Virus record (IMG/VR): IMGVR_UViG_3300036846_000743
Span: 162,074 to 226,073 of that record
Reading direction: 5' to 3' (one strand)
DNA: 64,000 nt
The position numbers were made by a program, and so were the translations under genes. Below are positions 4,638-64,000 of the stretch, piece by piece; the stretch's first letter is position 1; every line of letters starts with the position of its first letter. A model generated the notes under the pieces. That model had not been told where the DNA came from. It searched no databases and saw nothing but the letters and a program-made list of their open reading frames with translations.

Positions 4638-5636
4638 TTACTTCTTGTGTTCCGGCGGCTTATGTTCCGGCGGCCGATGCGTTTCGGGTGACCTGGCATG
4701 GTGCTCGGCCGGCTTGGCATGGTGCTCGGCCGGCTTGGCATGGTGCTCGGCCGGCTTGGCATGGTGCTCGGCCGGCTTGGCGTGATGTTCCGCCTGCTTG
4801 GCCGCCGCCTCCTTCTTTTCGGCCTCGCCTTCGGTCTGGAGCCTGGGCGGCTCGACGAACGAACCATCGGGATGGACCGTGCCCTGGGCTGGCACGCTGC
4901 CGAAGCTGGCCCGCCGGGGCAGCCCAAACGCCCCGGTGATGCCGCCACCAGCACTGGGCGGAGTCACAGGCGCGCCGGCCGAGCCGCCAGGTGCTTCCGG
5001 CTGGAAATGGCCATCCGGCGTCCTGGCCGACACGGTACGCATTGTCTTGGGCGCCATCTTGGCCTGTTCGAGCGCCGTGACGACGCGCGAGCCCCGCGGG
5101 GTCACAACCGGGGTGACTGCGCGCACAACCGGCACGCCGCCGGCGATGCCCGTGCCGCTGTGGGTCGGGACCGTCATGTTCGCCATGGCTCGCAGCCGGG
5201 GATCGGCCTTGGCGATCTCATCCTCGTCCATCTCGGCCAGTATATTCATGACTTCGACGCGGGCACGTAGCCGGTCACGGTAGCCAATCTGGTTCTGCCG
5301 GTAGCCATCACCGCCGACGGTATAGGCCGTGCTGTAGCCGCCGCCTCGCTGCCCCTTGGTGGCAACCTGTGGTACTCCGACGTTGCGCAGCTTGGGACGG
5401 TTGGGATAGCGGCGGCCGCTGCGTCCCACGATCGCATCGGGATAACCGTCGCGATCGTAGTCGATCATGACCGGGCTGACCGCCCTGGCGCCGCGCTCGA
5501 CCCGGGCATCGAAGCTCTCGATAGGTCCGCCGCCAGCAGCAGCATCACCATTCTCGATCGCCTCCTTGCGGCGAGCCTTTTCTTCGGGCGTCAGCTGACG
5601 ATGACCTTTGTGCGCTGTCTCGTGTGCTTTGGCCAT
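4638..5636 (-). CDS. low-complexity protein with a DxDxDG motif and His-rich C-terminal repeats
   Basis: AAGGAG RBS; DYDRDGYPD; AEHHAKP repeats followed by PPEHK repeats. Confidence 0.75.
   Translation of the reverse strand: MAKAHETAHKGHRQLTPEEKARRKEAIENGDAAAGGGPIESFDARVERGARAVSPVMIDYDRDGYPDAIVGRSGRRYPNRPKLRNVGVPQVATKGQRGGGYSTAYTVGGDGYRQNQIGYRDRLRARVEVMNILAEMDEDEIAKADPRLRAMANMTVPTHSGTGIAGGVPVVRAVTPVVTPRGSRVVTALEQAKMAPKTMRTVSARTPDGHFQPEAPGGSAGAPVTPPSAGGGITGAFGLPRRASFGSVPAQGTVHPDGSFVEPPRLQTEGEAEKKEAAAKQAEHHAKPAEHHAKPAEHHAKPAEHHAKPAEHHARSPETHRPPEHKPPEHKK
4694..4798. repeat. 21-bp coding tandem repeat (4 perfect copies + 1 degenerate)
   Basis: tggcatggtgctcggccggct at 4694, 4715, 4736 and 4757; variant at 4778; encodes AEHHAKP on the minus strand. 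Confidence 0.95.
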
Positions 5637-5728: not shown

Positions 5729-6385
5729 TCAGAAATGCGCCGCCACAACTCCCGGTTGGTGAATCACTGGCAGCTTGTGCGCGCAGCGCAGATAAGCCCC
5801 GAAATAGTCGGCGTCATGCCGCTCCTGTGCGTGCTTGAAAACGCCCAGCTCACAGGCCCTGATCGTGGGGAAAGCCATGCAGGTCAGATCAACTTCGCCG
5901 GGCCTGAGATCATCGACCGGGTGCTTGCGGCTCGGCCGCACGCCCAGATACATGGGATGCGGCAGCAAGACCTGGGGATTGTATTCGCGCGTCACCCACC
6001 AGTCGATGTCGACCAGCGACAAACAGCCAGGCACCCTGGCGATGTTCTCGGCGTGGGCCAGTAAGTAGTCAGGATACAGCATACAGTCGTGTCCGATGAT
6101 CACCGTGTAGTCGCCGGTCGCCAGCTCCAGCCCGCGGCGGCGTGAGACATTGCCCCATTTACCCGGCGCGCTGGGTAAGGTAACGAAGCTGAACCGCTCG
6201 GGCATGCCCGGTTCCATCAGCGTCGTGAGAAAGTCATCGAAGATAGCGCGGGCAACAGGGTGCGCGCCGTCGGCCACGAAGATCACGTTCCAGTCAGCCA
6301 GCTTTTGCCGCAATATCGTGGAAAGAATATTGGGCATGAGCCCTTCCCGCTCATAAACCGTGACGACGATGGTGAACTGGCTCAT
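5729..6385 (-). CDS. glycosyltransferase family 2 (GT-A)
   Basis: FTIVVTVYER...VIFVADG...RRRGLELATGDY...GHDC: GT2 N-terminal pattern. Confidence 0.8.
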   Translation of the reverse strand: MSQFTIVVTVYEREGLMPNILSTILRQKLADWNVIFVADGAHPVARAIFDDFLTTLMEPGMPERFSFVTLPSAPGKWGNVSRRRGLELATGDYTVIIGHDCMLYPDYLLAHAENIARVPGCLSLVDIDWWVTREYNPQVLLPHPMYLGVRPSRKHPVDDLRPGEVDLTCMAFPTIRACELGVFKHAQERHDADYFGAYLRCAHKLPVIHQPGVVAAHF

Positions 6386-7098
6386 AGCGCGACCCACGGC
6401 TTGATCGGGTGATGTCGGCAGCGGAAGAACGGGTTCCCCAGCCGTTGCTTGTTCCAGGGATCCCTGGTGCGGCCCGGCGAGAGCGAAATGCACTGCATAT
6501 TCAACCGCCACAGACAGTACGCAAATGACAGCTGGTCGCGCCGGCTGCCACGCTCGATCTCGCCCCACCACAGCTCGGAAAGCCGTCTGAGCTGCCCGCT
6601 GTGCCGCCGCAACAAGATCGATGTTTCGTGCAGCTTGTAACCCTTGCTGTCAAAGCCTTCCTCGCAGTAGCGCAGCATCTGGGCCTGAACCACGGCCGGA
6701 TCGTCAACCGGGATGGAGATGACCTGCTCGGCTTCTTCTTCGAGCGTATTCCGCGAAGGATGCCGGAAGCTGGCGATGTCCGGCCCCCGCAGGAACCATT
6801 CGGGGAACCAGGAGATATCGGCCACCGGTTCGTAATTTGCGTCCATCCAGATCGAGTATTCGTACTCCGGAAAACACTCCATGGGATTGTGCTTGTGCCA
6901 GCGGGCCGTACGCACCGGATCGGTCGCGTGTCGCCAGAGCAGCGGCCGCACGACCCACGGCGCTGTGCTGATCTGGGGATCAAGCTCCTTATCGAGGAAA
7001 AGCACATAGTCGAACTGAGGACAGACGAACGATACCTGCGGGCAAGGATCTCGGTCGGCGACGATGCAGGTGTAAAAGACCGTCTTCATGCTGATCAT
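6382..7098 (-). CDS. DUF616 / TOD1-MUCI70-like glycosyltransferase
   Basis: YSIWMDAN, RHPSR...EE and RRDQLSFAYCLW motifs. Confidence 0.8.
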   Translation of the reverse strand: MISMKTVFYTCIVADRDPCPQVSFVCPQFDYVLFLDKELDPQISTAPWVVRPLLWRHATDPVRTARWHKHNPMECFPEYEYSIWMDANYEPVADISWFPEWFLRGPDIASFRHPSRNTLEEEAEQVISIPVDDPAVVQAQMLRYCEEGFDSKGYKLHETSILLRRHSGQLRRLSELWWGEIERGSRRDQLSFAYCLWRLNMQCISLSPGRTRDPWNKQRLGNPFFRCRHHPIKPWVAL

Positions 7099-7919
7099 CC
7101 GCGGTAATGGTGGGTGATGTCCTCGTGGAGCCGGGCCAGGGACATCTCACGGACTTCTCCTCGCCAGTGATAGTCGGCTTCGACGGCGTCATTCCCCGTG
7201 TGGATGTGATAACACCGGGCGATGCTCCGGCACATGTTCTCGTGCAGGAGCCTGAGCTGTCGGTGCGAGTTGAAGTCATGCCCGAGCCGGATCAGTAATT
7301 CGATCTTGTCGAGATGGCCGAAATGATAGGACTCATCGTAGCGAATGCCCAGGTTCCAGCCGTGCCGAGTGATGATGAGCTGAGGCTCGTCCAGCTCAGC
7401 AGTCGGCACTGGCACACCTGCCAGCGCAGCATTCCAGGATGCATGACTGATCCGGAGCATCGGCAGCGAGTAGGCCAGCTTGCCTTTGCCGTCGACGTGA
7501 TCACTCACGATCTCGGCCATGACTTCTTCCCATAGGTCCCATGTAAACCCGCAGTCGCCATCCAGGACGGCTGCGAACTGGGCGCCATGCTCATCGAAAG
7601 CGATGCGGAGGCCCTCGTTGCGGGCGTGGTTAATTCCGGGGCAGTAAAGCAAGCGATCGTCGCGACCCTTGGCCTTGAAGTAGGGATCTTCCCTGAACAC
7701 CAGTTCGCGAAGTCGGCCCCGGTACCCGGGCGCGAGCAGCTTGCAGTAGGCCGCGACCAGCTCCGGGTTCCAGACCCGGTTGATGATCCAGTACTTGGTC
7801 ACGCCGCCCAGTTCTGGCTCCCTGAGTAATTGCTCGAGCACGACCAGCCTGCTGCCTGGCAGATCACGAGGTGGCAGCTCATTGCCCAGGATCCTGATCA
7901 CGAAGAAAAGCGGTCTCAT
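7095..7919 (-). CDS. putative GT-A glycosyltransferase
   Basis: INHARNEGL followed by a DxD motif (VLDGDC); lies in the GT cluster. Confidence 0.6.
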   Translation of the reverse strand: MRPLFFVIRILGNELPPRDLPGSRLVVLEQLLREPELGGVTKYWIINRVWNPELVAAYCKLLAPGYRGRLRELVFREDPYFKAKGRDDRLLYCPGINHARNEGLRIAFDEHGAQFAAVLDGDCGFTWDLWEEVMAEIVSDHVDGKGKLAYSLPMLRISHASWNAALAGVPVPTAELDEPQLIITRHGWNLGIRYDESYHFGHLDKIELLIRLGHDFNSHRQLRLLHENMCRSIARCYHIHTGNDAVEADYHWRGEVREMSLARLHEDITHHYRG

Positions 7920-8953
7920 CGCGTCTTCCACACCTCCCGCGGAACAGCGTCTAACCATGCGGCCTCGAAGTCAAGCCGCCGCTGTTCCAGACCGATCGAG
8001 CAGCCTGCGGATATCCGCGACAATTCGGCCGGTTCGGTGAGGAGCATGAGCGCGTCGATCAGGCTCTGTCGATCTGCCGGCATGAGCAGTGTCAGCTCAT
8101 CGGGGACGAAACTGGCAGCCGAGCAGGGAACCAGTATCGAATTCCTGGGGTTTGCCAGCTCATCGAGCGTCTGGGTGTCGAACCCCACGATGGGCGTTCC
8201 CATGTGGAGCGAGAACAAGGCCCACATGCCGAAGTTGTAGATGGTCGACGAGAGCAGAGTTACCGAGTGCTCGCCACAGCGCAGAAGCTGTTGCTGATAG
8301 TTCACCGGCCGATCGAGAGTCAGCCGGGGCTCGATCTTCGCCAGGTTTTCGAGCCGCTTGACCAGGACACCGCGGCGACCATCCATCGAAACTGTAACCT
8401 GAACAGACTGATCATATTCGAACAACGCCTCGACGACATCGATGACCGAGCCGTCACCGCTATCTTCCGGTCGGTCGACCGGGGGCACGTAAACCTTGAG
8501 TGATCCATCGGGTTGCCGGTTCGTGACCGGCAGCATCGGGCTCCACGGACATAAGGTCGCATTGCGCAAGCCGCGATCCTTGAGTATATGGACCCAGTGC
8601 TGACTGGGAGCCATGACCCGCCAGAACTGCCGACCAGCTTCACCGATCGCGCGCAGATCATCCCAGTCAGGTACCAGGATAGCGCGCTTGCCAGCCTTGG
8701 CCACCCAGGTCGGCTGAGCTGGCTGCGGGCAAAATGTCCAGATCACGATATCGAGCGTGGCCGCCCAGTCAGTAAACCGGATCTGCGAATCATGCCGGAC
8801 CCGTTTGTCCCAGAAACTGCTCACCAGTGGCTTCCTGGGCGTCGGCGTCAGGATGGTCACATCATGCTGCCACTGGCTCATCAGATCGGCGATCTGGATG
8901 GCCGCGTAGGTTGAGATCCGACGTTGCCATCGGGTATAGATGCCGACGTTCAT
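7916..8953 (-). CDS. putative GT-B (GT4-like) glycosyltransferase
   Basis: MNVGIY start; HDVTIL; C-terminal NFGMWALFSLHMGTPIVGFD resembles a degenerate EGFGxxxxEAMxxGxPVI motif. Confidence 0.6.
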   Translation of the reverse strand: MNVGIYTRWQRRISTYAAIQIADLMSQWQHDVTILTPTPRKPLVSSFWDKRVRHDSQIRFTDWAATLDIVIWTFCPQPAQPTWVAKAGKRAILVPDWDDLRAIGEAGRQFWRVMAPSQHWVHILKDRGLRNATLCPWSPMLPVTNRQPDGSLKVYVPPVDRPEDSGDGSVIDVVEALFEYDQSVQVTVSMDGRRGVLVKRLENLAKIEPRLTLDRPVNYQQQLLRCGEHSVTLLSSTIYNFGMWALFSLHMGTPIVGFDTQTLDELANPRNSILVPCSAASFVPDELTLLMPADRQSLIDALMLLTEPAELSRISAGCSIGLEQRRLDFEAAWLDAVPREVWKTR

Positions 8954-8966
8954 TCACCACCCCGGC

Positions 8967-9854
8967 TCAACCAGCCTTCGGCCGGACTTGCTGCGACCGG
9001 TGCGGCATATCCTTTCCGCGATCATAAAGGACCCAATCCAGGTCTTCCGGAAGCGACGCCGCGATGGCGTCTGCCACACCCGGTTCGAGTAGCTCGCGCC
9101 ACTCGTCAACAGTTGAATGGTCTAGTCCCACCGGCCGCGCCTTGCGCTGCTCTTCGACCCAGTGCGGATAAGTGAACATGGTCTTCCCGTCCTGCGCGTA
9201 GCTGTTCGCCGGGCTCGTCATGGCCGGGTCGTAGTCGATCCCGATGAACTCAGCGATCCGTGACATCTGCTGCTCGGGAAAGAGCACCACATCCTCGAAT
9301 CGCACCAGCAGGACCGGCCTGTCAGCATCCAGCGCAGCCACGGCATCACTGGTCATGTGTGCGTAACGGTGCGCGGCGCTGACGGGGTTTTCCTTGTACC
9401 AGGGTCGCTTGCACCACGAGCAGTAAACTGCTCGCGGATCTCTGACCATGACGAGCGTCGGTATGTCCGGCATTTTGGAAAAGACGTGGCTGATCAGGTA
9501 GCCGATGTAGAAAACGCTCCTGTCGACCAGGATATCCCGATCATGGATCCCGTAGTGCGCAACTATATGGTCGAAGACTTCCGCGTACATGCTTTGCCAG
9601 CTACCAGTGGCCCTGATGGTCTTGTCGGCAATCTTCTCCAGTTCGGCTTCAGTTATGACTCGGCCGAGCGGTGGCAGGGGCCCTTCCCCCGATATTGGCG
9701 CAAATGGATCTACGTATGGAGGTTTGGTGTTAATGTTTAGAATCCCCACCTCAGTCTCCGCGAGGATCCGGGGATGAGCCCGCAGCAGGTCCAGCATCAA
9801 GGTGGTGCCGCTGTTCGTGACCCCGCAAAGAGCCAAGACCTTTGTAAGTAGCAT
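8967..9854 (-). CDS. sulfotransferase (Sulfotransfer_3-like)
   Basis: 5'-PSB-like GVTNSGTTLM; 3'-PB VRDPRAVYCS; VRFEDVVLFPE. Confidence 0.85.
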   Translation of the reverse strand: MLLTKVLALCGVTNSGTTLMLDLLRAHPRILAETEVGILNINTKPPYVDPFAPISGEGPLPPLGRVITEAELEKIADKTIRATGSWQSMYAEVFDHIVAHYGIHDRDILVDRSVFYIGYLISHVFSKMPDIPTLVMVRDPRAVYCSWCKRPWYKENPVSAAHRYAHMTSDAVAALDADRPVLLVRFEDVVLFPEQQMSRIAEFIGIDYDPAMTSPANSYAQDGKTMFTYPHWVEEQRKARPVGLDHSTVDEWRELLEPGVADAIAASLPEDLDWVLYDRGKDMPHRSQQVRPKAG

Positions 9855-35368: not shown

Positions 35369-35956
35369 TCAGCATGTTTCACTGGCTCGGTTGGCTTCTC
35401 GTGGCTCACGGCCCGCCGGGATGGTTCTGCATAGTATATGACACGAAAACGCGTCAGCGTTAAGTGGTTTGCCATCGGGCTTCCAGACGGGTGGCCCAGG
35501 CACCAGTCCCGGAAAAACTCGATCTCCTTCATACTCACCTTCGACGAGCGTCAAGTAGATCTTGTTGGCGAAAGGCAGAAAGATCTCGTAGACCTGGGCC
35601 CCGCCAATCACGACCGCGTCGGTCGCGCCGTTGCCGTTCCAGCCCCAAGCTGCCATATCCAGGGCCTCGAGCGGATTCCTGGCCCAGCGAGTCCCCTGTA
35701 CATCAACCCCGGCCGACGGCCAACTTTCATCCCACGGCCGCCTGCTCAGCACGACATTGACCCGCTTCTCGAGCGGCTGACCATTGCGCGTCAGGATCGA
35801 GTCGTAAGTCCGTCTACCCATGATGAGCGACTGGTGCAGCGTATGCTCGCGGAACCACTTGACGTCCTTGATATCGGGCCAGGGCAAACTGCCATCCCGA
35901 CCGATCACTCCTTGTTTGGTCATTGCCACGATGATCGCAAGATTGCGAATATGCAC
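35369..35956 (-). CDS. folA: dihydrofolate reductase
   Basis: VIGRDGSLPW, D..WF...T, MGRRTYDSI, PL..R.N.VLS and IGGAQVY. Confidence 0.95.
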   Translation of the reverse strand: MHIRNLAIIVAMTKQGVIGRDGSLPWPDIKDVKWFREHTLHQSLIMGRRTYDSILTRNGQPLEKRVNVVLSRRPWDESWPSAGVDVQGTRWARNPLEALDMAAWGWNGNGATDAVVIGGAQVYEIFLPFANKIYLTLVEGEYEGDRVFPGLVPGPPVWKPDGKPLNADAFSCHILCRTIPAGREPREANRASETC

Positions 35957-36028
35957 TGGTTAAAGTCCTTGGTACTTTTCGCGGCCAACCTGGCAGCGGT
36001 CTGCCGCCCGTTGGCTTAGCTGAGGTAG

Positions 36029-36925
36029 CTAAACGGCGACTTCGGCACGTAGCTTGCCCGGGTGCGGCGCGTAGCCGTCCAGGAAGAACCAGGCCGGATC
36101 GGCCTTCAGCAGCTGATCGGGGCTCAGGTAGGAGCACGCCTCGAAGAACTTGTCGCTGATCATCAGATTCGGCAACGGCCGCAGCTTGCGGGTGATCTGC
36201 TCCCGCACCTGGTCAAAATGGTTGTCGTAGAGGTGGCAGTCGGCGATGTTCGCCACCAAGTAGCGGGGCGTCAACCCGGCGAGCCGGCCGAAGATGTGGG
36301 CCAGCAGCGCGTACTGGACGATGTTAAAAGGCGCCCCCAGGAACATGTCGATGCTCCGCCAAAAACAAACGACATCAAGATGGCCGTTGGTCGGCAGCCA
36401 CTGGCTCATCGTATGGCAGGGCGCCAGGCCCATGTCCGGAACGACTGGTGGATCCCATGCCGTCAGCAAGATCCGCCGCCGGAAACGATGGCTCGGATCG
36501 GCAACCACGGCCTTGAGCTGCATCAAGATGTAAGTGATCTGGTCCCACATCTCGGCGAAGCCGTGCTCTGCCCGATATTCCCATCGCCTCCAGGCCCGAC
36601 CGTAGATCTTGGGCACATCTCCATCCGGCTGACTCCACTGGTCCCACAGCTTGCGGCGGATGAAGTTGCCGCTACCGTCCTGCCGGCCCAGCGTATTGAT
36701 ATTGGTCTCGCCACGCAGGAACCAGAACACTTCGTCAACGACCACGTCGAACGGTACCGGCTTGGTTGTGACGATCGGGAATCCATCCCGGAGATCGAAT
36801 CTGAGCTGCTGCCCCAGCAGCATTCGGCATGTAGCCTTGCGATCTTCACTCTTGATCACGGCGCCCGACTGAACGTCTTCACCCTCGTCGATGATCTTCC
36901 TGAGCAGATCAAGATACTGCTTCAT
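36029..36925 (-). CDS. thyA: thymidylate synthase
   Basis: MKQYLDL, LAPCH (catalytic Cys), RSIDMFLGAPFN, DCHLYDNH, C-terminal VAV. Confidence 0.95.
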   Translation of the reverse strand: MKQYLDLLRKIIDEGEDVQSGAVIKSEDRKATCRMLLGQQLRFDLRDGFPIVTTKPVPFDVVVDEVFWFLRGETNINTLGRQDGSGNFIRRKLWDQWSQPDGDVPKIYGRAWRRWEYRAEHGFAEMWDQITYILMQLKAVVADPSHRFRRRILLTAWDPPVVPDMGLAPCHTMSQWLPTNGHLDVVCFWRSIDMFLGAPFNIVQYALLAHIFGRLAGLTPRYLVANIADCHLYDNHFDQVREQITRKLRPLPNLMISDKFFEACSYLSPDQLLKADPAWFFLDGYAPHPGKLRAEVAV

Positions 36926-61886: not shown

Positions 61887-62011
61887 TTGACAGTTTGGCC
61901 GCTCCCTGGTGACCATGAGGATACAGCCTGGTTGGGCCCTCCAAAGTGCGCCGACTGGATGGCGCTCCCCAACAAGGATGGACCATGGATGTTTCGCACG
62001 GAGGAAGTCTC
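61887..62011 (+). promoter_or_regulatory. putative csrA promoter and GGA-rich leader (CsrA-binding sites)
   Basis: TTGACA at 61887 with a weak -10 (GACCAT); seven GGA at 61919, 61957, 61976, 61980, 61987, 62000 and 62003. Confidence 0.65.
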
Positions 62012-62260
62012 ATGCTAGTCCTATCGCGAAAAATTGGCGAGCGGATCCACATCAATGATGATGTCGTCATCACGGTGATCCGGATCCAAGGGGACAAGGT
62101 GCGCCTCGGTATCGAAGCCCCTCGCATCATCCCGGTGCACCGGGCAGAAGTCCTGGAACGGATCAGGATCGCGGCGGCCCTGGCGCCACAGCCCGATACA
62201 TCGGCTCCTGGCATGCCTGCATCTGAAGAGCGGCCTACCAGAGTGGCTCGCCGTCCCTAG
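62012..62260 (+). CDS. csrA: carbon storage regulator CsrA/RsmA
   Basis: MLVLSRKIGERIHINDDVVITVIRIQGDKVRLGIEAPRIIPVHRAEV; GGAGG RBS. Confidence 0.95.
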   Translation: MLVLSRKIGERIHINDDVVITVIRIQGDKVRLGIEAPRIIPVHRAEVLERIRIAAALAPQPDTSAPGMPASEERPTRVARRP

Positions 62261-63065
62261 TCTGCTTGCGGAACCACGCATAATACTGCCGCAGGGACTG
62301 TTCGTCGTGCACCGCAACATATCGAATGGGATGGTAGATGAGGAAGTCGCGGCGCAGAATCTTCGGGCTCGGCGCCAGTCGCATGTGATTGTGCTGGTTG
62401 GCGTAGATGGGCGGCTTGGGATCATCCATGCTGCCCCAGGTGACGACGTACGCGCCGAGAATCTGGGCGACCCACGAAATGTATGGGTCAGGCCAGAGTG
62501 GCCATCCCGCGCAGCCATCCGGCACCAACAGGCTACGTTCGACCATCGCATCGACCAGCCCGCGAGACATCCAGTTGATCGCGTAGAAGATCGTTTCTGA
62601 ACTCAGGTCTACGGGCCCGAAGATGTTCCTGGCTTCGGGCAGCCAGCGACCTAGCAGCTGGGGCACCTGCTTCCAGTAGTTCTGATAGTGGACCCTATCA
62701 CGGACCCCGAGCAGATCGATAGCTGTGAGATCCATCTTGGCGATTGCCCACTCGTCGATGCCGCAACCGATCGGGAGTGCGTCATCGTCGAGGCAGAGCA
62801 CATACCTGAAGTCGATGCCGTCGTTGAGGGCAAACTGGATGCCCTCGTAGTTCTTGAACCCTGATAGATGCTTCTGCCCGGGAAGCCGCGATGCGATCCG
62901 AAAGTAATTATCCTCACGGCGAATCACCGGATCGTCGCGCTCGAGTGTGTCGTCCACACAGACGATGGCGCACGGCAGTGTATGCGACCAGCGAATCGCT
63001 TCCACATGATCCTGGATGATACCCTTCCTGTTGGTCGTGAAAACGACCAGGGTTTCTACCTTCAT
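62235..63065 (-). CDS. putative GT-A glycosyltransferase
   Basis: VCVDD and VLCLDDDALP; ATGA-coupled to the GT75-like gene. Confidence 0.6.
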   Translation of the reverse strand: MKVETLVVFTTNRKGIIQDHVEAIRWSHTLPCAIVCVDDTLERDDPVIRREDNYFRIASRLPGQKHLSGFKNYEGIQFALNDGIDFRYVLCLDDDALPIGCGIDEWAIAKMDLTAIDLLGVRDRVHYQNYWKQVPQLLGRWLPEARNIFGPVDLSSETIFYAINWMSRGLVDAMVERSLLVPDGCAGWPLWPDPYISWVAQILGAYVVTWGSMDDPKPPIYANQHNHMRLAPSPKILRRDFLIYHPIRYVAVHDEQSLRQYYAWFRKQTRDGEPLW

Positions 63066-64000
63066 GACTCCCATCCTGCCTCCTTGAATTTGTCACACCA
63101 CTCCAGGATCCAGCCGCCGAGCTGTGGTATGTATTGTCGCAGCTGTTGATCACGAACCTGCACAACATGAGCCCCTTCGAGATACGTGCCGATGTGACTC
63201 ATGCATCGCAGTGGCGTATCGTCGCTTGGCCCCAGCGGCACGTCGTCGATGATCCTCCAGAATTCCTCATTGGCCCTGATACCGGGTGACTCCCCGACCA
63301 GGTTATCCATGGGCCGCGATGCCTTCATGTGATTGACGATCGGCTTACCCACCGAACAGGCCAGATCCAGGTGGCGCATGCACTTCTGGGCGATCACGCC
63401 GCCCCAGATATCATCAAACCTGCGGAATGGCATGCCTTCACCATTGCGCGGGAAATAAAGCAAGGGGGTGATCTCGCGGCGAAATGCGATGTTCATGCCG
63501 CAGAGTGGCCAGTACTGTCGCGGGCTCATCACCCGCGAGTGCCGGTAGATATTCTTCATGGGCTTCCAGGGCTTGTAATATCCCTCGGGCGTCCAGTTGG
63601 TCAGCTCGTGAACCGCATCACGGTCCGGGATCGTAGCCCAGACGCCCATGTTCAGTGAGGTTGTCATCTCGCCGAGAGAATTCTGACGGAGCCGCGGCCG
63701 CCGCCGACCATCATCATCAGTGCCGTAAGGCATCCCTCGTGGTATGAAGCCAGGGATCGAAGTCGTCCACCGATCGGTGTGATAGAGCGCTGCCACATGC
63801 TGTTCCACGAAGCTGGCACGCGCAGCCTCGATCAGCTGGTCATGATCAGCGCCCTTGCGGTGCCAGCTGGGATCAGCCGCCAGTGCACATGGCAGACAGT
63901 CGTCGTCGAGCGTGATGACGACATCGGCCCCATGCTCGAGCACCGCGGCCAGAAAGCCCCAGGTCTTGATGCCCGAGTCGCAGCGGGCCAACCAGCCTGG
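63062..64000 (-). CDS. reversibly glycosylated polypeptide / UDP-arabinopyranose mutase-like (GT75); 5' end outside window
   Basis: DSGIKTWGF, TLDDDC, PRGMPY, GVW..IPD.DA, CGMNIAFRRE, RFDDIWGG and H.KAS....NL..E..G; frame stays open to 64000. Confidence 0.85.
   Translation of the reverse strand, partial: PGWLARCDSGIKTWGFLAAVLEHGADVVITLDDDCLPCALAADPSWHRKGADHDQLIEAARASFVEQHVAALYHTDRWTTSIPGFIPRGMPYGTDDDGRRRPRLRQNSLGEMTTSLNMGVWATIPDRDAVHELTNWTPEGYYKPWKPMKNIYRHSRVMSPRQYWPLCGMNIAFRREITPLLYFPRNGEGMPFRRFDDIWGGVIAQKCMRHLDLACSVGKPIVNHMKASRPMDNLVGESPGIRANEEFWRIIDDVPLGPSDDTPLRCMSHIGTYLEGAHVVQVRDQQLRQYIPQLGGWILEWCDKFKEAGWES

What the first reader, a model, noticed from the sequence alone, without database searches (positions are those of the whole stretch)
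62235..64000. Phage-encoded GT75/RGP (UDP-arabinopyranose mutase-like) coupled to a glycosyltransferase
Seen: RGP motifs (LDDDC, RGMPY, PD.DA, CGMNIAF, RFDDIW) ATGA-coupled to a DDD-containing GT-A gene. Established: characterised GT75 proteins are mainly plant and algal UDP-Arap/Araf mutases, and some T4-like phages arabinosylate their DNA. Inference: the phage makes a furanose donor for DNA, virion or host-surface glycosylation.
Basis: partly seen in the sequence, partly recalled or inferred. Interest (0 to 1): 0.6.

Follow-up and report, generated by a model that had tools for sequence, protein, structure and literature searches.

The report
Phage sugar-ring mutase with glycosyltransferases
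A 226-kb soil jumbo phage carries a plant-type (GT75) sugar-nucleotide ring-contracting mutase in a tightly coupled operon with two glycosyltransferases, next to a sulfotransferase; it probably builds a furanose-containing glycan, but what gets glycosylated is unknown and the phage lacks the known machinery for glycosylating DNA.

Summary
Window 63062-64000 (-) encodes residues 79-390 of a 390-aa GT75/RGP protein (PF03214, 59 bits against a cut-off of 23.8). Its stop overlaps (ATGA) the start of a 276-aa gene with an invariant DDD motif, which a confident model shows to be a GT-A glycosyltransferase.

The window is the end of a circularly assembled 226-kb soil phage record, so the gene runs across the record's ends.
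- a second GT-A (287 aa, GT92/GT2_4-like), whose stop lies 10 nt upstream of the mutase start;
- a divergent sulfotransferase.

This upstream GT plus RGP is the conserved unit. It occurs in 9-10 related phage loci and 31 of 79 bacterial loci, where an SDR epimerase/dehydratase usually follows.

All catalytic residues of the solved mutase MtdL are kept. The specificity positions have the active-plant states (Asp86, Ser87, Gly246), which points to a UDP-sugar: L-arabinose or D-galactose.

DNA glycosylation is not supported. The only thymidylate-synthase homologue is canonical, and no TET, TAGT or C5-methylase gene was detected. Known phage DNA arabinosylation uses no GT75.

Verdict: a new phage member of a known enzyme family, in an uncharacterised conserved module. 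Acceptor unknown. Moderate interest.

The parts
63062..64000 (-). GT75/RGP-family NDP-sugar pyranose-furanose mutase, residues 79-390 of 390. The first 78 residues lie across the circular junction at C1:363-130, and window 63872-64000 repeats C1:1-129.
   Evidence: PF03214 E 6.2e-16, 59 bits > 23.8. MtdL (PDB 7yua/7xpr) E 7e-14 with the protein alone and 4.8e-36 with the family profile. Start and length.
63899..63907 (-). DDD (DXD) metal/nucleotide motif, residues D110-D112, equivalent to MtdL D109-D111
   Evidence: Invariant in all 26 aligned family members. Aligned to MtdL DDD. Numbering.
63737..63739 (-). Arg166 in PRGMPY, equivalent to the autoglycosylated and catalytically essential Arg (MtdL R159, OsUAM1 R158)
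   Evidence: Alignment to MtdL. At least 90% conserved. Role of the residue from PMC9937993.
63974..63979 (-). Asp86-Ser87, the specificity positions (MtdL has Ser86-Asp87; active plant RGPs have Asp-Ser)
   Evidence: Profile alignment to MtdL. In MtdL, S86D abolishes GDP binding and D87S abolishes GDP-Fuc mutase activity; AtRGP2 Ser91 corresponds to Asp87.
63329..63421 (-). Arg272, Asp275 (RFDD) and His302, equivalent to MtdL R257 (beta-phosphate), D260 (sugar) and H287 (Mn2+)
   Evidence: These residues are lost in the inactive class-2 plant RGPs and kept here.
62235..63065 (-). 276-aa GT-A glycosyltransferase, translationally coupled to the mutase by ATGA. Invariant DDD at residues 93-95.
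   Evidence: No Pfam, PHROG or NCBIfam hit. 28 homologues, all on phage-like contigs. AF2 pLDDT 93.2. Z 14-16 to GT31-type enzymes (CHSY3/CHPF, B3GalT5/6, the galactofuranosyltransferase AfGfsA), to GT14 and to PBCV-1 A64R. Its N-terminal ~100 residues are homologous to the RGP N-terminus (hhalign 95.5%, E 1.6e-8).
61946..62260 (+). CsrA-family gene, convergent with and overlapping the 3' end of the GT gene by 26 nt. It marks the downstream edge of the operon and is not claimed to be part of the glycosylation function.
   Evidence: PF02599 E 6e-22. Found at the same place in 8 related phage loci.

Best explanation
The feature is a translationally coupled three-gene operon on the minus strand of a circularly assembled 226-kb soil jumbo phage.

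Gene order:
1. A GT92/GT2_4-like GT-A glycosyltransferase (287 aa, C1:374-1237, outside the window).
2. A GT75 NDP-sugar pyranose/furanose mutase (390 aa). Its GTG start follows the upstream stop by 10 nt.
3. A GT31-like GT-A glycosyltransferase (276 aa), coupled by ATGA.
A PAPS-type sulfotransferase is transcribed divergently from the operon's head.

Shown:
- the family and fold of each protein;
- retention of every catalytic residue of the mutase;
- the gene couplings;
- conservation of the GT-RGP pair in phages and bacteria;
- all the enzymes lack membrane-spanning segments.

Inferred:
- The mutase uses Mn2+/Mg2+ and its conserved Arg166 to contract the ring of a host-supplied UDP-sugar of galacto configuration (UDP-D-Galp or UDP-L-Arap) to the furanose.
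- One or both flanking GT-A enzymes use that short-lived donor at once.
- The sulfotransferase decorates the product.
- The phage has at least five further glycosyltransferase-like genes and a second sulfotransferase. Together these suggest cytoplasmic assembly of a complex, possibly sulfated glycan on a soluble acceptor.
- The acceptor is most likely a phage (virion) protein, as in chloroviruses and mycobacteriophages, rather than DNA.
For: Mutase:
- PF03214 above cut-off; the family profile hits MtdL at E 4.8e-36.
- DDD, R166, D204, R272, D275 and H302 align with MtdL D109-111, R159, D195, R257, D260 and H287, all required for activity. They are invariant or at least 90% conserved in the family alignment.
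- Asp86/Ser87/Gly246 are the states of active plant RGPs. [quoted passage not shown]

Coupling:
- Stop-to-start gaps of 10 nt with an AGGAG, and an ATGA overlap.

Folds:
- Upstream GT: pLDDT 93.7; Z 13.0 to ThuS, 12.2 to GalS1 (GT92), 11.8 to SunS. A bacterial homologue hits PF13704.
- Downstream GT: pLDDT 93.2; Z 14-16 to GT31-type enzymes, including a galactofuranosyltransferase.

Conservation:
- The GT-RGP pair is adjacent and co-oriented in 9-10 phage loci and 31 of 79 bacterial loci. An SDR epimerase/dehydratase lies directly downstream in 32 bacterial loci, and a Sulfotransfer_3 gene is present in 4.
- The phage sulfotransferase (PF13469, E 2e-8) is conserved in 8 phage loci.

More glyco genes in the same genome: GT2, TOD1/MUCI70-like, GT1, GT2 with a methyltransferase-like region, a PF13704 GT and a second sulfotransferase. 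No hydrophobic 19-mer in any of them exceeds 1.6 on the Kyte-Doolittle scale.

Against DNA as the acceptor:
- One thymidylate-synthase homologue only, with L143, D169 and N177 kept, and DHFR beside it.
- No TET/JBP, C5-methylase or TAGT match.
Against: - No activity, sugar, nucleotide or acceptor has been measured.
- The base-contacting positions (Ala11, Asn13, Gly43) match neither plant RGPs nor MtdL, so UDP is inferred from Asp86 alone.
- The operon sits at the head of the replication/recombination module (Mre11, Rad50, helicases, primase, polymerase, UvsX). This is the kind of place where DNA-modification genes sit in RB69-like phages (PMC13326640).
- In 12 other viral contigs a short RGP-like gene follows a TAGT-family gene, a family predicted to glycosylate DNA.
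- Nothing links the operon physically to capsid or tail genes in this phage.
- It is not shown which of the two GTs uses the furanose donor.
- The TET/JBP search rang in no control genome, so that negative result is weak.
- Terminase and major capsid genes were not identified in the limited scans.
Confidence: 0.55

Rival explanations
1. DNA furanosylation. The mutase supplies UDP-Araf or UDP-Galf, and one or both GT-A enzymes glycosylate a modified base in phage DNA to block restriction, as in RB69/DLP3 (Araf on 5-hydroxycytosine) or the Pootjesviridae (Galf supplied by a phage mutase).
For: - Position directly upstream of Mre11/Rad50 and the replication genes.
- RGP-like genes sit next to TAGT-family genes in 12 viral contigs.
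- GT-A-fold DNA glycosyltransferases exist.
Against: - No hydroxypyrimidine source: the single TS homologue keeps L143, D169 and N177 and sits beside DHFR.
- No TET/JBP, C5-methyltransferase or TAGT match.
- Neither GT is related to TAGT at profile level.
- The same GT-RGP-SDR module is a stand-alone operon in many bacterial MAGs.
- The module is associated with sulfotransferases, and no sulfated DNA glycan is known.
- The known Araf-DNA pathways use no GT75.
Confidence: 0.17
2. Host-envelope remodelling. The enzymes add furanose (and sulfate) to a host lipid-linked or cell-wall glycan during infection, changing the receptor to exclude other phages or to aid release.
For: - Phage GTs that alter host serotype are well known (established knowledge).
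- The bacterial homologues of the module presumably act on cellular glycoconjugates.
- Galf and Araf are typical envelope sugars in bacteria.
Against: - No membrane-spanning segment in any of the enzymes, and no flippase or GtrA/GtrC-like partner was seen.
- No integrase was looked for or noticed in the limited scans.
- At least eight glycosyltransferase-like genes is far more than serotype-conversion cassettes carry.
Confidence: 0.15
3. The RGP protein is not a mutase here. It would act as a self-glycosylating primer or plain glycosyltransferase, or as a non-catalytic scaffold like class-2 plant RGPs.
For: - GT75 proteins autoglycosylate on the conserved Arg, and some plant members are inactive (PMC9937993).
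- The phage clade carries two insertions not seen in the bacterial homologues in the same alignment: about 24 aa after the DDD motif and about 14 aa after PRG.
Against: - His302 and Arg272, which are lost in the inactive AtRGP5/class-2 proteins, are retained, together with all residues whose mutation kills the MtdL mutase.
- Strong conservation across phages and bacteria.
Confidence: 0.08
4. It is a GDP-sugar mutase of the MtdL/Hyg20 type (GDP-L-Gal or GDP-L-Fuc to the furanose).
For: - MtdL is the best solved relative by direct sequence search (E 7e-14, against 3e-3 for the plant entry 8cid).
- In some viral contigs the SDR next to RGP resembles NDP-hexose 4,6-dehydratases, which would fit a 6-deoxyhexose.
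Against: - Positions 86/87/228/229 are Asp/Ser/Gly/Met as in plant UDP-sugar enzymes, not Ser/Asp/Ser/Gln. In MtdL, S86D abolishes GDP binding and D87S and Q229A abolish activity.
- 8cid is a class-2-like sequence (DDN for DDD, no RFDD). With the family profile it scores almost as well as MtdL (E 2.8e-31).
Confidence: 0.08

Closest known systems
MtdL / Hyg20 (bacterial GT75 GDP-L-Galp / GDP-L-Fucp mutases; PDB 7xpr, 7yua)
   Same: Same family (PF03214). GT-A core with DDD, catalytic Arg, Asp195, Arg257, Asp260 and the Mn2+-binding His all conserved. FAD-independent ring contraction is expected.
   Different: The specificity residues differ: Asp86/Ser87/Gly246/Met247 against Ser/Asp/Ser/Gln. 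The phage clade has two extra insertions. The context is a phage operon with GT-A enzymes rather than an antibiotic gene cluster.
Plant class-1 RGPs / UDP-arabinopyranose mutases (OsUAM1, AtRGP1-3)
   Same: Same family. Same states at the sugar-pocket and base-exclusion positions (Asp86, Ser87, Gly246) and the same CGMN and RFDDIW motifs. [quoted passage not shown]
   Different: The N-terminal nucleotide-binding strand is ASNR, not PTIR. Position 42-equivalent is Gly, not Asp. In a direct sequence search the only solved plant entry (the class-2-like 8cid) scores just E 3e-3; class-1 plant sequences were not compared. Prokaryotic-virus context.
Phage DNA furanosylation systems (RB69/DLP3 Araf-5hoC; Pootjesviridae Galf)
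   Same: Phage-encoded supply of an NDP-furanose plus glycosyltransferases, located near replication genes.
   Different: Those systems use a Ru5P-derived UDP-D-Araf pathway or an FAD-dependent UGM, not GT75. They also need a D169N/N177D thymidylate-synthase homologue, which is absent here.
Virion glycosylation by virus-encoded cytosolic GTs (chlorovirus PBCV-1 A64R; mycobacteriophage capsid/tail-tube glycosylation)
   Same: Multiple soluble virus-encoded GT-A enzymes. The downstream GT aligns with PBCV-1 A64R at Z 14.1 (3.4 A rmsd, 192 residues).
   Different: No evidence here for the acceptor. A mutase and sulfotransferases are not among the components I know of in those systems.
GalS1 (GT92) and ThuS/SunS (GT2 S-glycosyltransferases), for the upstream GT
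   Same: GT-A fold with a DXD-type motif (EVDE) and a C-terminal His. Z 11-13 over about 205 residues.
   Different: 8-11% identity. The phage protein has no Pfam match. Only a bacterial homologue reaches PF13704.

Membership tests
GT75 / RGP (PF03214) | Profile match above the curated cut-off | tested here: met
   59 bits against 23.8; 56.8 bits in the six-frame genome search.
GT75 / RGP (PF03214) | DDD (DXD) motif needed for metal binding and activity | tested here: met
   D110-D112 align to MtdL D109-D111. Invariant in 26 sequences.
GT75 / RGP (PF03214) | Conserved autoglycosylated/catalytic arginine (OsUAM1 R158, MtdL R159) | tested here: met
   R166 in PRGMPY.
GT75 / RGP (PF03214) | Residues lost in inactive members: Mn2+-binding His287 and beta-phosphate Arg257, plus Asp195 and Asp260 | tested here: met
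   H302, R272, D204 and D275 are present. Their roles come from PMC9937993.
GT75 / RGP (PF03214) | NDP-pyranose/furanose mutase activity dependent on a divalent cation | not testable with these tools
   Needs a recombinant enzyme assay.
Plant-type UDP-sugar specificity (class-1 UAM) | Asp at MtdL position 86, Ser at 87, Gly at 228 | tested here: met
   D86, S87 and G246. Mutant data.
Plant-type UDP-sugar specificity (class-1 UAM) | Pro at position 13, Ile at 15 and Asp at 42 (base contacts) | tested here: not met
   Ala11, Asn13 and Gly43 instead.
MtdL/Hyg20-type GDP-sugar mutase | Thr13, Asn42, Ser86, Asp87, Ser228, Gln229 | tested here: not met
   Ala, Gly, Asp, Ser, Gly, Met at the aligned positions.
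GT-A glycosyltransferase (downstream 276-aa protein) | Rossmann-like GT-A fold with a DXD motif | tested here: met
   pLDDT 93.2. 997 of 998 compared chains at Z >= 5, and the top 50 listed are glycosyltransferases of the GT-A type. Best Z 15.9. DDD is invariant.
GT31 (PF01762), downstream protein | Sequence-profile membership | tested here: not met
   No Pfam hit at E < 0.01. Only fold-level resemblance, at 8-14% identity.
GT92 (PF01697) / Glyco_tranf_2_4 (PF13704), upstream protein | Sequence-profile membership | tested here: inconclusive
   The phage protein has no Pfam hit. The bacterial homologue L108:4862-5998 hits PF13704 at E 4.8e-8. The nearest Atlas clusters with a common Pfam family carry PF01697. 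Fold Z 12.2 to GalS1.
Phage DNA hydroxypyrimidine glycosylation system (T-even / RB69 type) | Thymidylate-synthase homologue with N177D plus L143D/E or D169N | tested here: not met
   Only one homologue in the genome. It reads GLAPCH ... RSIDMFLGAPFN, i.e. L143, D169 and N177 are retained. It scores above the cut-off of the thyA equivalog TIGR03284.
TET/JBP-associated glycosyltransferase (TAGT) system | TAGT (PF20691) or TET/JBP (PF12851) gene present | tested here: not met
   No match in the genome. The PF12851 control rang nowhere, so that half of the test is weak. hhalign of both GTs against a TAGT alignment is not significant.

The most novel reading that the evidence does not exclude
A lineage of soil jumbo phages builds its own sulfated, furanose-containing glycan (arabinogalactan-like) in the host cytoplasm and puts it on the virion.

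The toolkit would be GT75 mutase, GT92-like, GT31-like and TOD1/MUCI70-like transferases, GT1/GT2 enzymes and two sulfotransferases. Its family make-up recalls plant cell-wall glycan synthesis.

If so, the underlying GT-RGP-SDR(-sulfotransferase) operon, shared with Solirubrobacterales, Acidobacteriota and other uncultured soil bacteria, would be an uncharacterised, FAD-independent route to furanosyl glycoconjugates in prokaryotes.
Probability: 0.2. Interest if true: 0.75.

Novelty: new member of a known kind. Interest (0 to 1): 0.5.

Why it matters
- Furanose sugars are absent from animals and often mark microbial surfaces. The only well-known prokaryotic route to them is the flavin enzyme UGM. 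Only two bacterial GT75 mutases have been characterised, both in antibiotic pathways.
- RGP homologues were confirmed on 96 viral contigs and 171 prokaryotic genome stretches. In 9-10 of the 80 viral and 31 of the 79 bacterial loci examined, they are paired with one particular GT-A enzyme. This points to a widespread, untested furanosylation module.
- In phages it could underlie virion glycan shields or, less likely here, a new DNA modification. Either would affect host defence, immune recognition and phage engineering.
- The enzymes would also be useful biocatalysts for making NDP-furanoses.

Tried and rejected
- PHROGs and NCBIfam gave nothing for the mutase, either GT or the sulfotransferase.
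- blastn of the locus against 50,697 phage records found no match. tblastn found one 595-kb uncultured phage at 40% identity.
- The N-terminal 124 residues alone found no solved relative. The family profile was needed.
- Sequence profiles of both GTs found nothing credible in the PDB.
- hhalign of both GTs against a TAGT alignment, and against each other, was not significant.
- Typing the SDR enzymes next to RGP in other loci, to infer the sugar, failed. All NCBIfam scores were below the equivalog cut-offs: the bacterial ones are unclassifiable and the viral ones resemble a 4,6-dehydratase.
- Host inference was weak. The DNA polymerase is only 25% identical to polymerases of isolated phages, mostly T5-like. 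In a FastTree tree the nearest non-viral RGPs are from Xanthobacteraceae, Bauldia and other alphaproteobacterial MAG contigs, on long branches. This is no more than a hint.
- The 'moraphage' jumbo lineage (PMC12619734) was considered and dropped. Its predicted hosts are Bacteroidota; no sequences were compared.
- Sequencing runs: only the source soil metagenome holds the locus and no RNA run does. Read laying was therefore not used, and there is no expression evidence.
- No complex prediction was run, because no physical binding is claimed.
- The full-length 390-aa protein spans the record's ends. It was joined only inside the Python box, for residue numbering and the tree, and was never typed into another tool. 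Structure prediction of the mutase itself was left out for that reason and because the two prediction jobs went to the GTs.
Full report
**1. What is at the coordinates**

Two co-oriented minus-strand ORFs fill window 62235-64000.

It matches Pfam PF03214 (reversibly glycosylated polypeptide, GT75) at E 6.2e-16, 59 bits against a gathering cut-off of 23.8. A six-frame search of the whole genome finds the same single copy.

The downstream ORF contains LCLDDDALP. Its 25 orthologues all begin at the second Met, MKVETL. The DNA reads GAG TCA TGA AGG, so the ATG of this gene overlaps the TGA of the RGP gene.

**2. The window end is not the gene's end**

- The window is the last 64 kb of a 226,073-bp IMG/VR virus record, estimated 100% complete by CheckV.
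- The record's last 129 bases repeat its first 129 with one mismatch three bases from the end. This is the signature of a circular assembly.
- Read across the junction, the RGP gene starts at a GTG (C1:363-361) seven bases after an AGGAG. That start lies ten bases after the TAG of another gene. The protein is 390 aa, and the window holds residues 79-390.

**3. It is a phage**

- Genes identified: a baseplate wedge protein, a UvsX-like recombinase, a 1245-aa family-A DNA polymerase, primase, DnaB-like helicase, and SbcC/Rad50-like and Mre11-like genes.
- About 260 genes lie almost all on one strand.
- Close homologues of the locus lie on contigs of 222-246 kb.
- No isolated phage is close: the polymerase is 25% identical at best.
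- The only sequencing run that holds the locus is a soil metagenome.

**4. The mutase**

With the protein alone, the best solved relatives are the MtdL entries (7yua, 7xpr; E 7e-14). The plant entry 8cid scores only E 3e-3. With a profile of 26 family members, both are strong: 4.8e-36 and 2.8e-31. 8cid carries DDN in place of DDD and lacks RFDD, so it looks like an inactive class-2 protein.

The MtdL paper (PMC9937993) defines the functional residues. Their states here are:

| MtdL residue | Role | This protein |
|---|---|---|
| D109-D111 (DXD) | metal/nucleotide binding | D110-D112 |
| R159 | catalytic, autoglycosylated Arg | R166 |
| D195 | sugar pocket | D204 |
| R257 | beta-phosphate | R272 |
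| D260 | sugar | D275 |
| H287 | Mn2+ | H302 |
| R289 | diphosphate contact | K304 |

H287 and R257 are exactly the residues missing from inactive plant RGPs. I therefore read this protein as an active NDP-pyranose/furanose mutase.

At the positions that differ between the GDP-sugar enzymes and the plant UDP-sugar enzymes, it has the plant states:
- Asp86 (the S86D change abolishes GDP binding in MtdL);
- Ser87 (AtRGP2 Ser91);
- Gly246 (AtRGP2 Gly216), followed by Met247 where MtdL has Gln229; a plant state for this position was not checked.

Three base-contacting positions (Ala11, Asn13, Gly43) fit neither group. [quoted passage not shown]

The phage has no PF01370-type NAD-dependent epimerase/dehydratase gene, so it must take its pyranose substrate from the host. 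UDP-Gal is common in bacteria and UDP-L-Ara is not known to be (my own knowledge).

**5. The partners**

*Downstream protein (276 aa).*
- It has no Pfam, PHROG or NCBIfam match. Only 28 homologues were found, all in the close phage clade.
- Its model is confident (pLDDT 93.2) and is a GT-A glycosyltransferase.
- Structural matches, Z 14-16: GT31-type enzymes (CHSY3/CHPF, B3GalT5/6, the Aspergillus galactofuranosyltransferase GfsA), GT14 enzymes, and PBCV-1 A64R.
- Its first ~100 residues are specifically related to the RGP N-terminus (hhalign 95.5%, E 1.6e-8).

*Upstream protein (287 aa, C1:374-1237).*
- It also has no family hit.
- Its model (pLDDT 93.7) is a GT-A closest to ThuS (Z 13.0), GalS1 of GT92 (12.2) and SunS (11.8).
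- A bacterial homologue reaches PF13704. The nearest Atlas clusters that have a common Pfam family carry PF01697, i.e. GT92.

*Sulfotransferase.* Diverging from the upstream GT is a Sulfotransfer_3 gene (E 2.3e-8).

**6. What is conserved**

In 80 viral loci fetched with the RGP profile, tblastn and clustering show the following.
- One block recurs in a family of large phage contigs: sulfotransferase (opposite strand), upstream GT, RGP, CsrA (opposite strand), Mre11, Rad50.
- The upstream GT is in 9-10 loci and the sulfotransferase in 8.
- The downstream GT occurs in only two of these loci (L004, L032).

In 79 prokaryotic loci, mostly soil MAGs of Solirubrobacterales, Actinomycetes, Acidobacteriota and Proteobacteria:
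- The upstream-GT homologue ends about 50 bases before RGP, on the same strand, in 31 loci.
- An SDR epimerase/dehydratase starts right after RGP in 32 loci.
- A Sulfotransfer_3 gene adjoins in four loci.
- Nothing else around the module is conserved.

The functional unit is thus GT-RGP(-SDR)(-sulfotransferase), shared by bacteria and phages. In this phage clade a second GT sits where the SDR sits in bacteria.

Phage RGPs occur in at least two other contexts:
- next to a GT2 and a dehydratase-like SDR, downstream of a capsid gene;
- as a short form behind a TAGT-family gene, beside ParB-like, terminase and portal genes.

**7. The acceptor**

*Against DNA as the acceptor.*
RB69 and DLP3 carry D-Araf on 5-hydroxycytosine. 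The donor is made from ribulose-5-phosphate, and the base is made by a thymidylate-synthase homologue with N177D, L143E and D169N. Pootjesviridae use an FAD-type UGM (PMC13326640).
- This phage has one TS homologue. It scores above the cut-off of the thyA equivalog TIGR03284, sits next to DHFR, and keeps L143, D169 and N177.
- No TET/JBP, C5-methyltransferase or TAGT gene was found. The TET control was uninformative.

*For a soluble, non-DNA acceptor.*
- The genome holds more glycosylation genes: a GT2, a TOD1/MUCI70-like protein and a second sulfotransferase at window 5.7-9.9 kb, and elsewhere a 770-aa GT1, a GT2 with a methyltransferase-like region and another PF13704 GT.
- None of these proteins has a membrane-like segment.
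- I therefore favour cytoplasmic assembly of a complex, possibly sulfated glycan on a soluble acceptor, most likely a phage protein.

*For DNA.*
- The operon's place at the head of the replication/recombination module, and the TAGT association elsewhere, keep DNA as a real rival (about 0.17).

**8. Novelty**

- GT75 is a known family. Only MtdL and Hyg20 have been characterised from bacteria.
- Phage-encoded GT75 has been listed in a soil virome survey, cited in PMC12016548. I found no functional or comparative study.
- This is a new phage member of a known enzyme kind. It sits in a conserved but uncharacterised module, the sugar is not settled and the acceptor is unknown.

Noticed in passing
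window 5729-9854 (minus strand): A second glycosylation cluster: GT2 (5729-6571, PF00535 E 1e-9), a TOD1/MUCI70-like glycosyltransferase domain (6382-7098, PF04765 E 4e-16), two unknown ORFs (7095-7958, 7916-8953), and a second sulfotransferase (8967-9854, PF13469 E 6.5e-14, PF00685 E 8e-8).
   Followed up: partly
G000 C1:145424-147736, C1:101018-102406, C1:153490-154377: Three further glycosyltransferase genes outside the window: a 770-aa GT1 (PF00534), a 462-aa GT2 with a weak methyltransferase match, and a 295-aa PF13704 GT. With the others this makes at least eight glycosyltransferase-like genes, two sulfotransferases and one mutase in one phage genome.
   Followed up: partly
window 4638-5636 (-): A 332-aa protein with five tandem AEHHAKP repeats at its C-terminus and Pro/Thr/Val-rich stretches, directly downstream of the GT2 gene. 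Function unknown; it could be a glycan acceptor, but this was not tested.
   Followed up: no
window 61946-62260 (+): A phage-encoded CsrA homologue (PF02599 E 6e-22), convergent with the glycosyltransferase gene and overlapping its 3' end by 26 nt. It is kept at this spot in 8 related phage loci.
   Followed up: partly
window 35369-36925 (-): Canonical thymidylate synthase (L143, D169 and N177 retained; above the cut-off of the thyA equivalog TIGR03284) next to a dihydrofolate reductase. The phage makes ordinary dTMP.
   Followed up: yes
window 63872-64000 and G000 C1:1-129: The record's ends overlap by 129 bp with one mismatch three bases from the end. This looks like an assembler k-mer overlap of a circular contig, although the source classes the record as linear. 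The RGP gene is split by this artificial break.
   Followed up: yes
L066-L079 (e.g. L071:676-2312): In 12 small viral contigs a short RGP-like ORF (254-260 aa, lacking the N-terminal ~90 residues) directly follows a TET-associated glycosyltransferase (TAGT, PF20691 E 1.6e-31), between a ParB-like gene and terminase/portal genes. This may be a furanose-based DNA modification system.
   Followed up: partly
L041, L046, L052, L058, L059 (e.g. L058:4029-12125): In another set of viral contigs a GT2, RGP and 4,6-dehydratase-like SDR operon lies a few kb downstream of the major capsid gene (PF05065). This hints at capsid glycosylation with a 6-deoxy- or other hexofuranose.
   Followed up: partly
L108:4862-5998, P0185, P0176: Bacterial homologues of the upstream GT carry an extra ~125-residue N-terminal domain (motifs GWV...RPDV...SGF) that the phage protein lacks. 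Its function is unknown.
   Followed up: no
L003:7606-9387 (-): A 593-aa protein with a BRO-N / anti-repressor (Ant) domain, about 7 kb upstream of the operon in a stretch of small ORFs that gave no Pfam or PHROG match where scanned.
   Followed up: no
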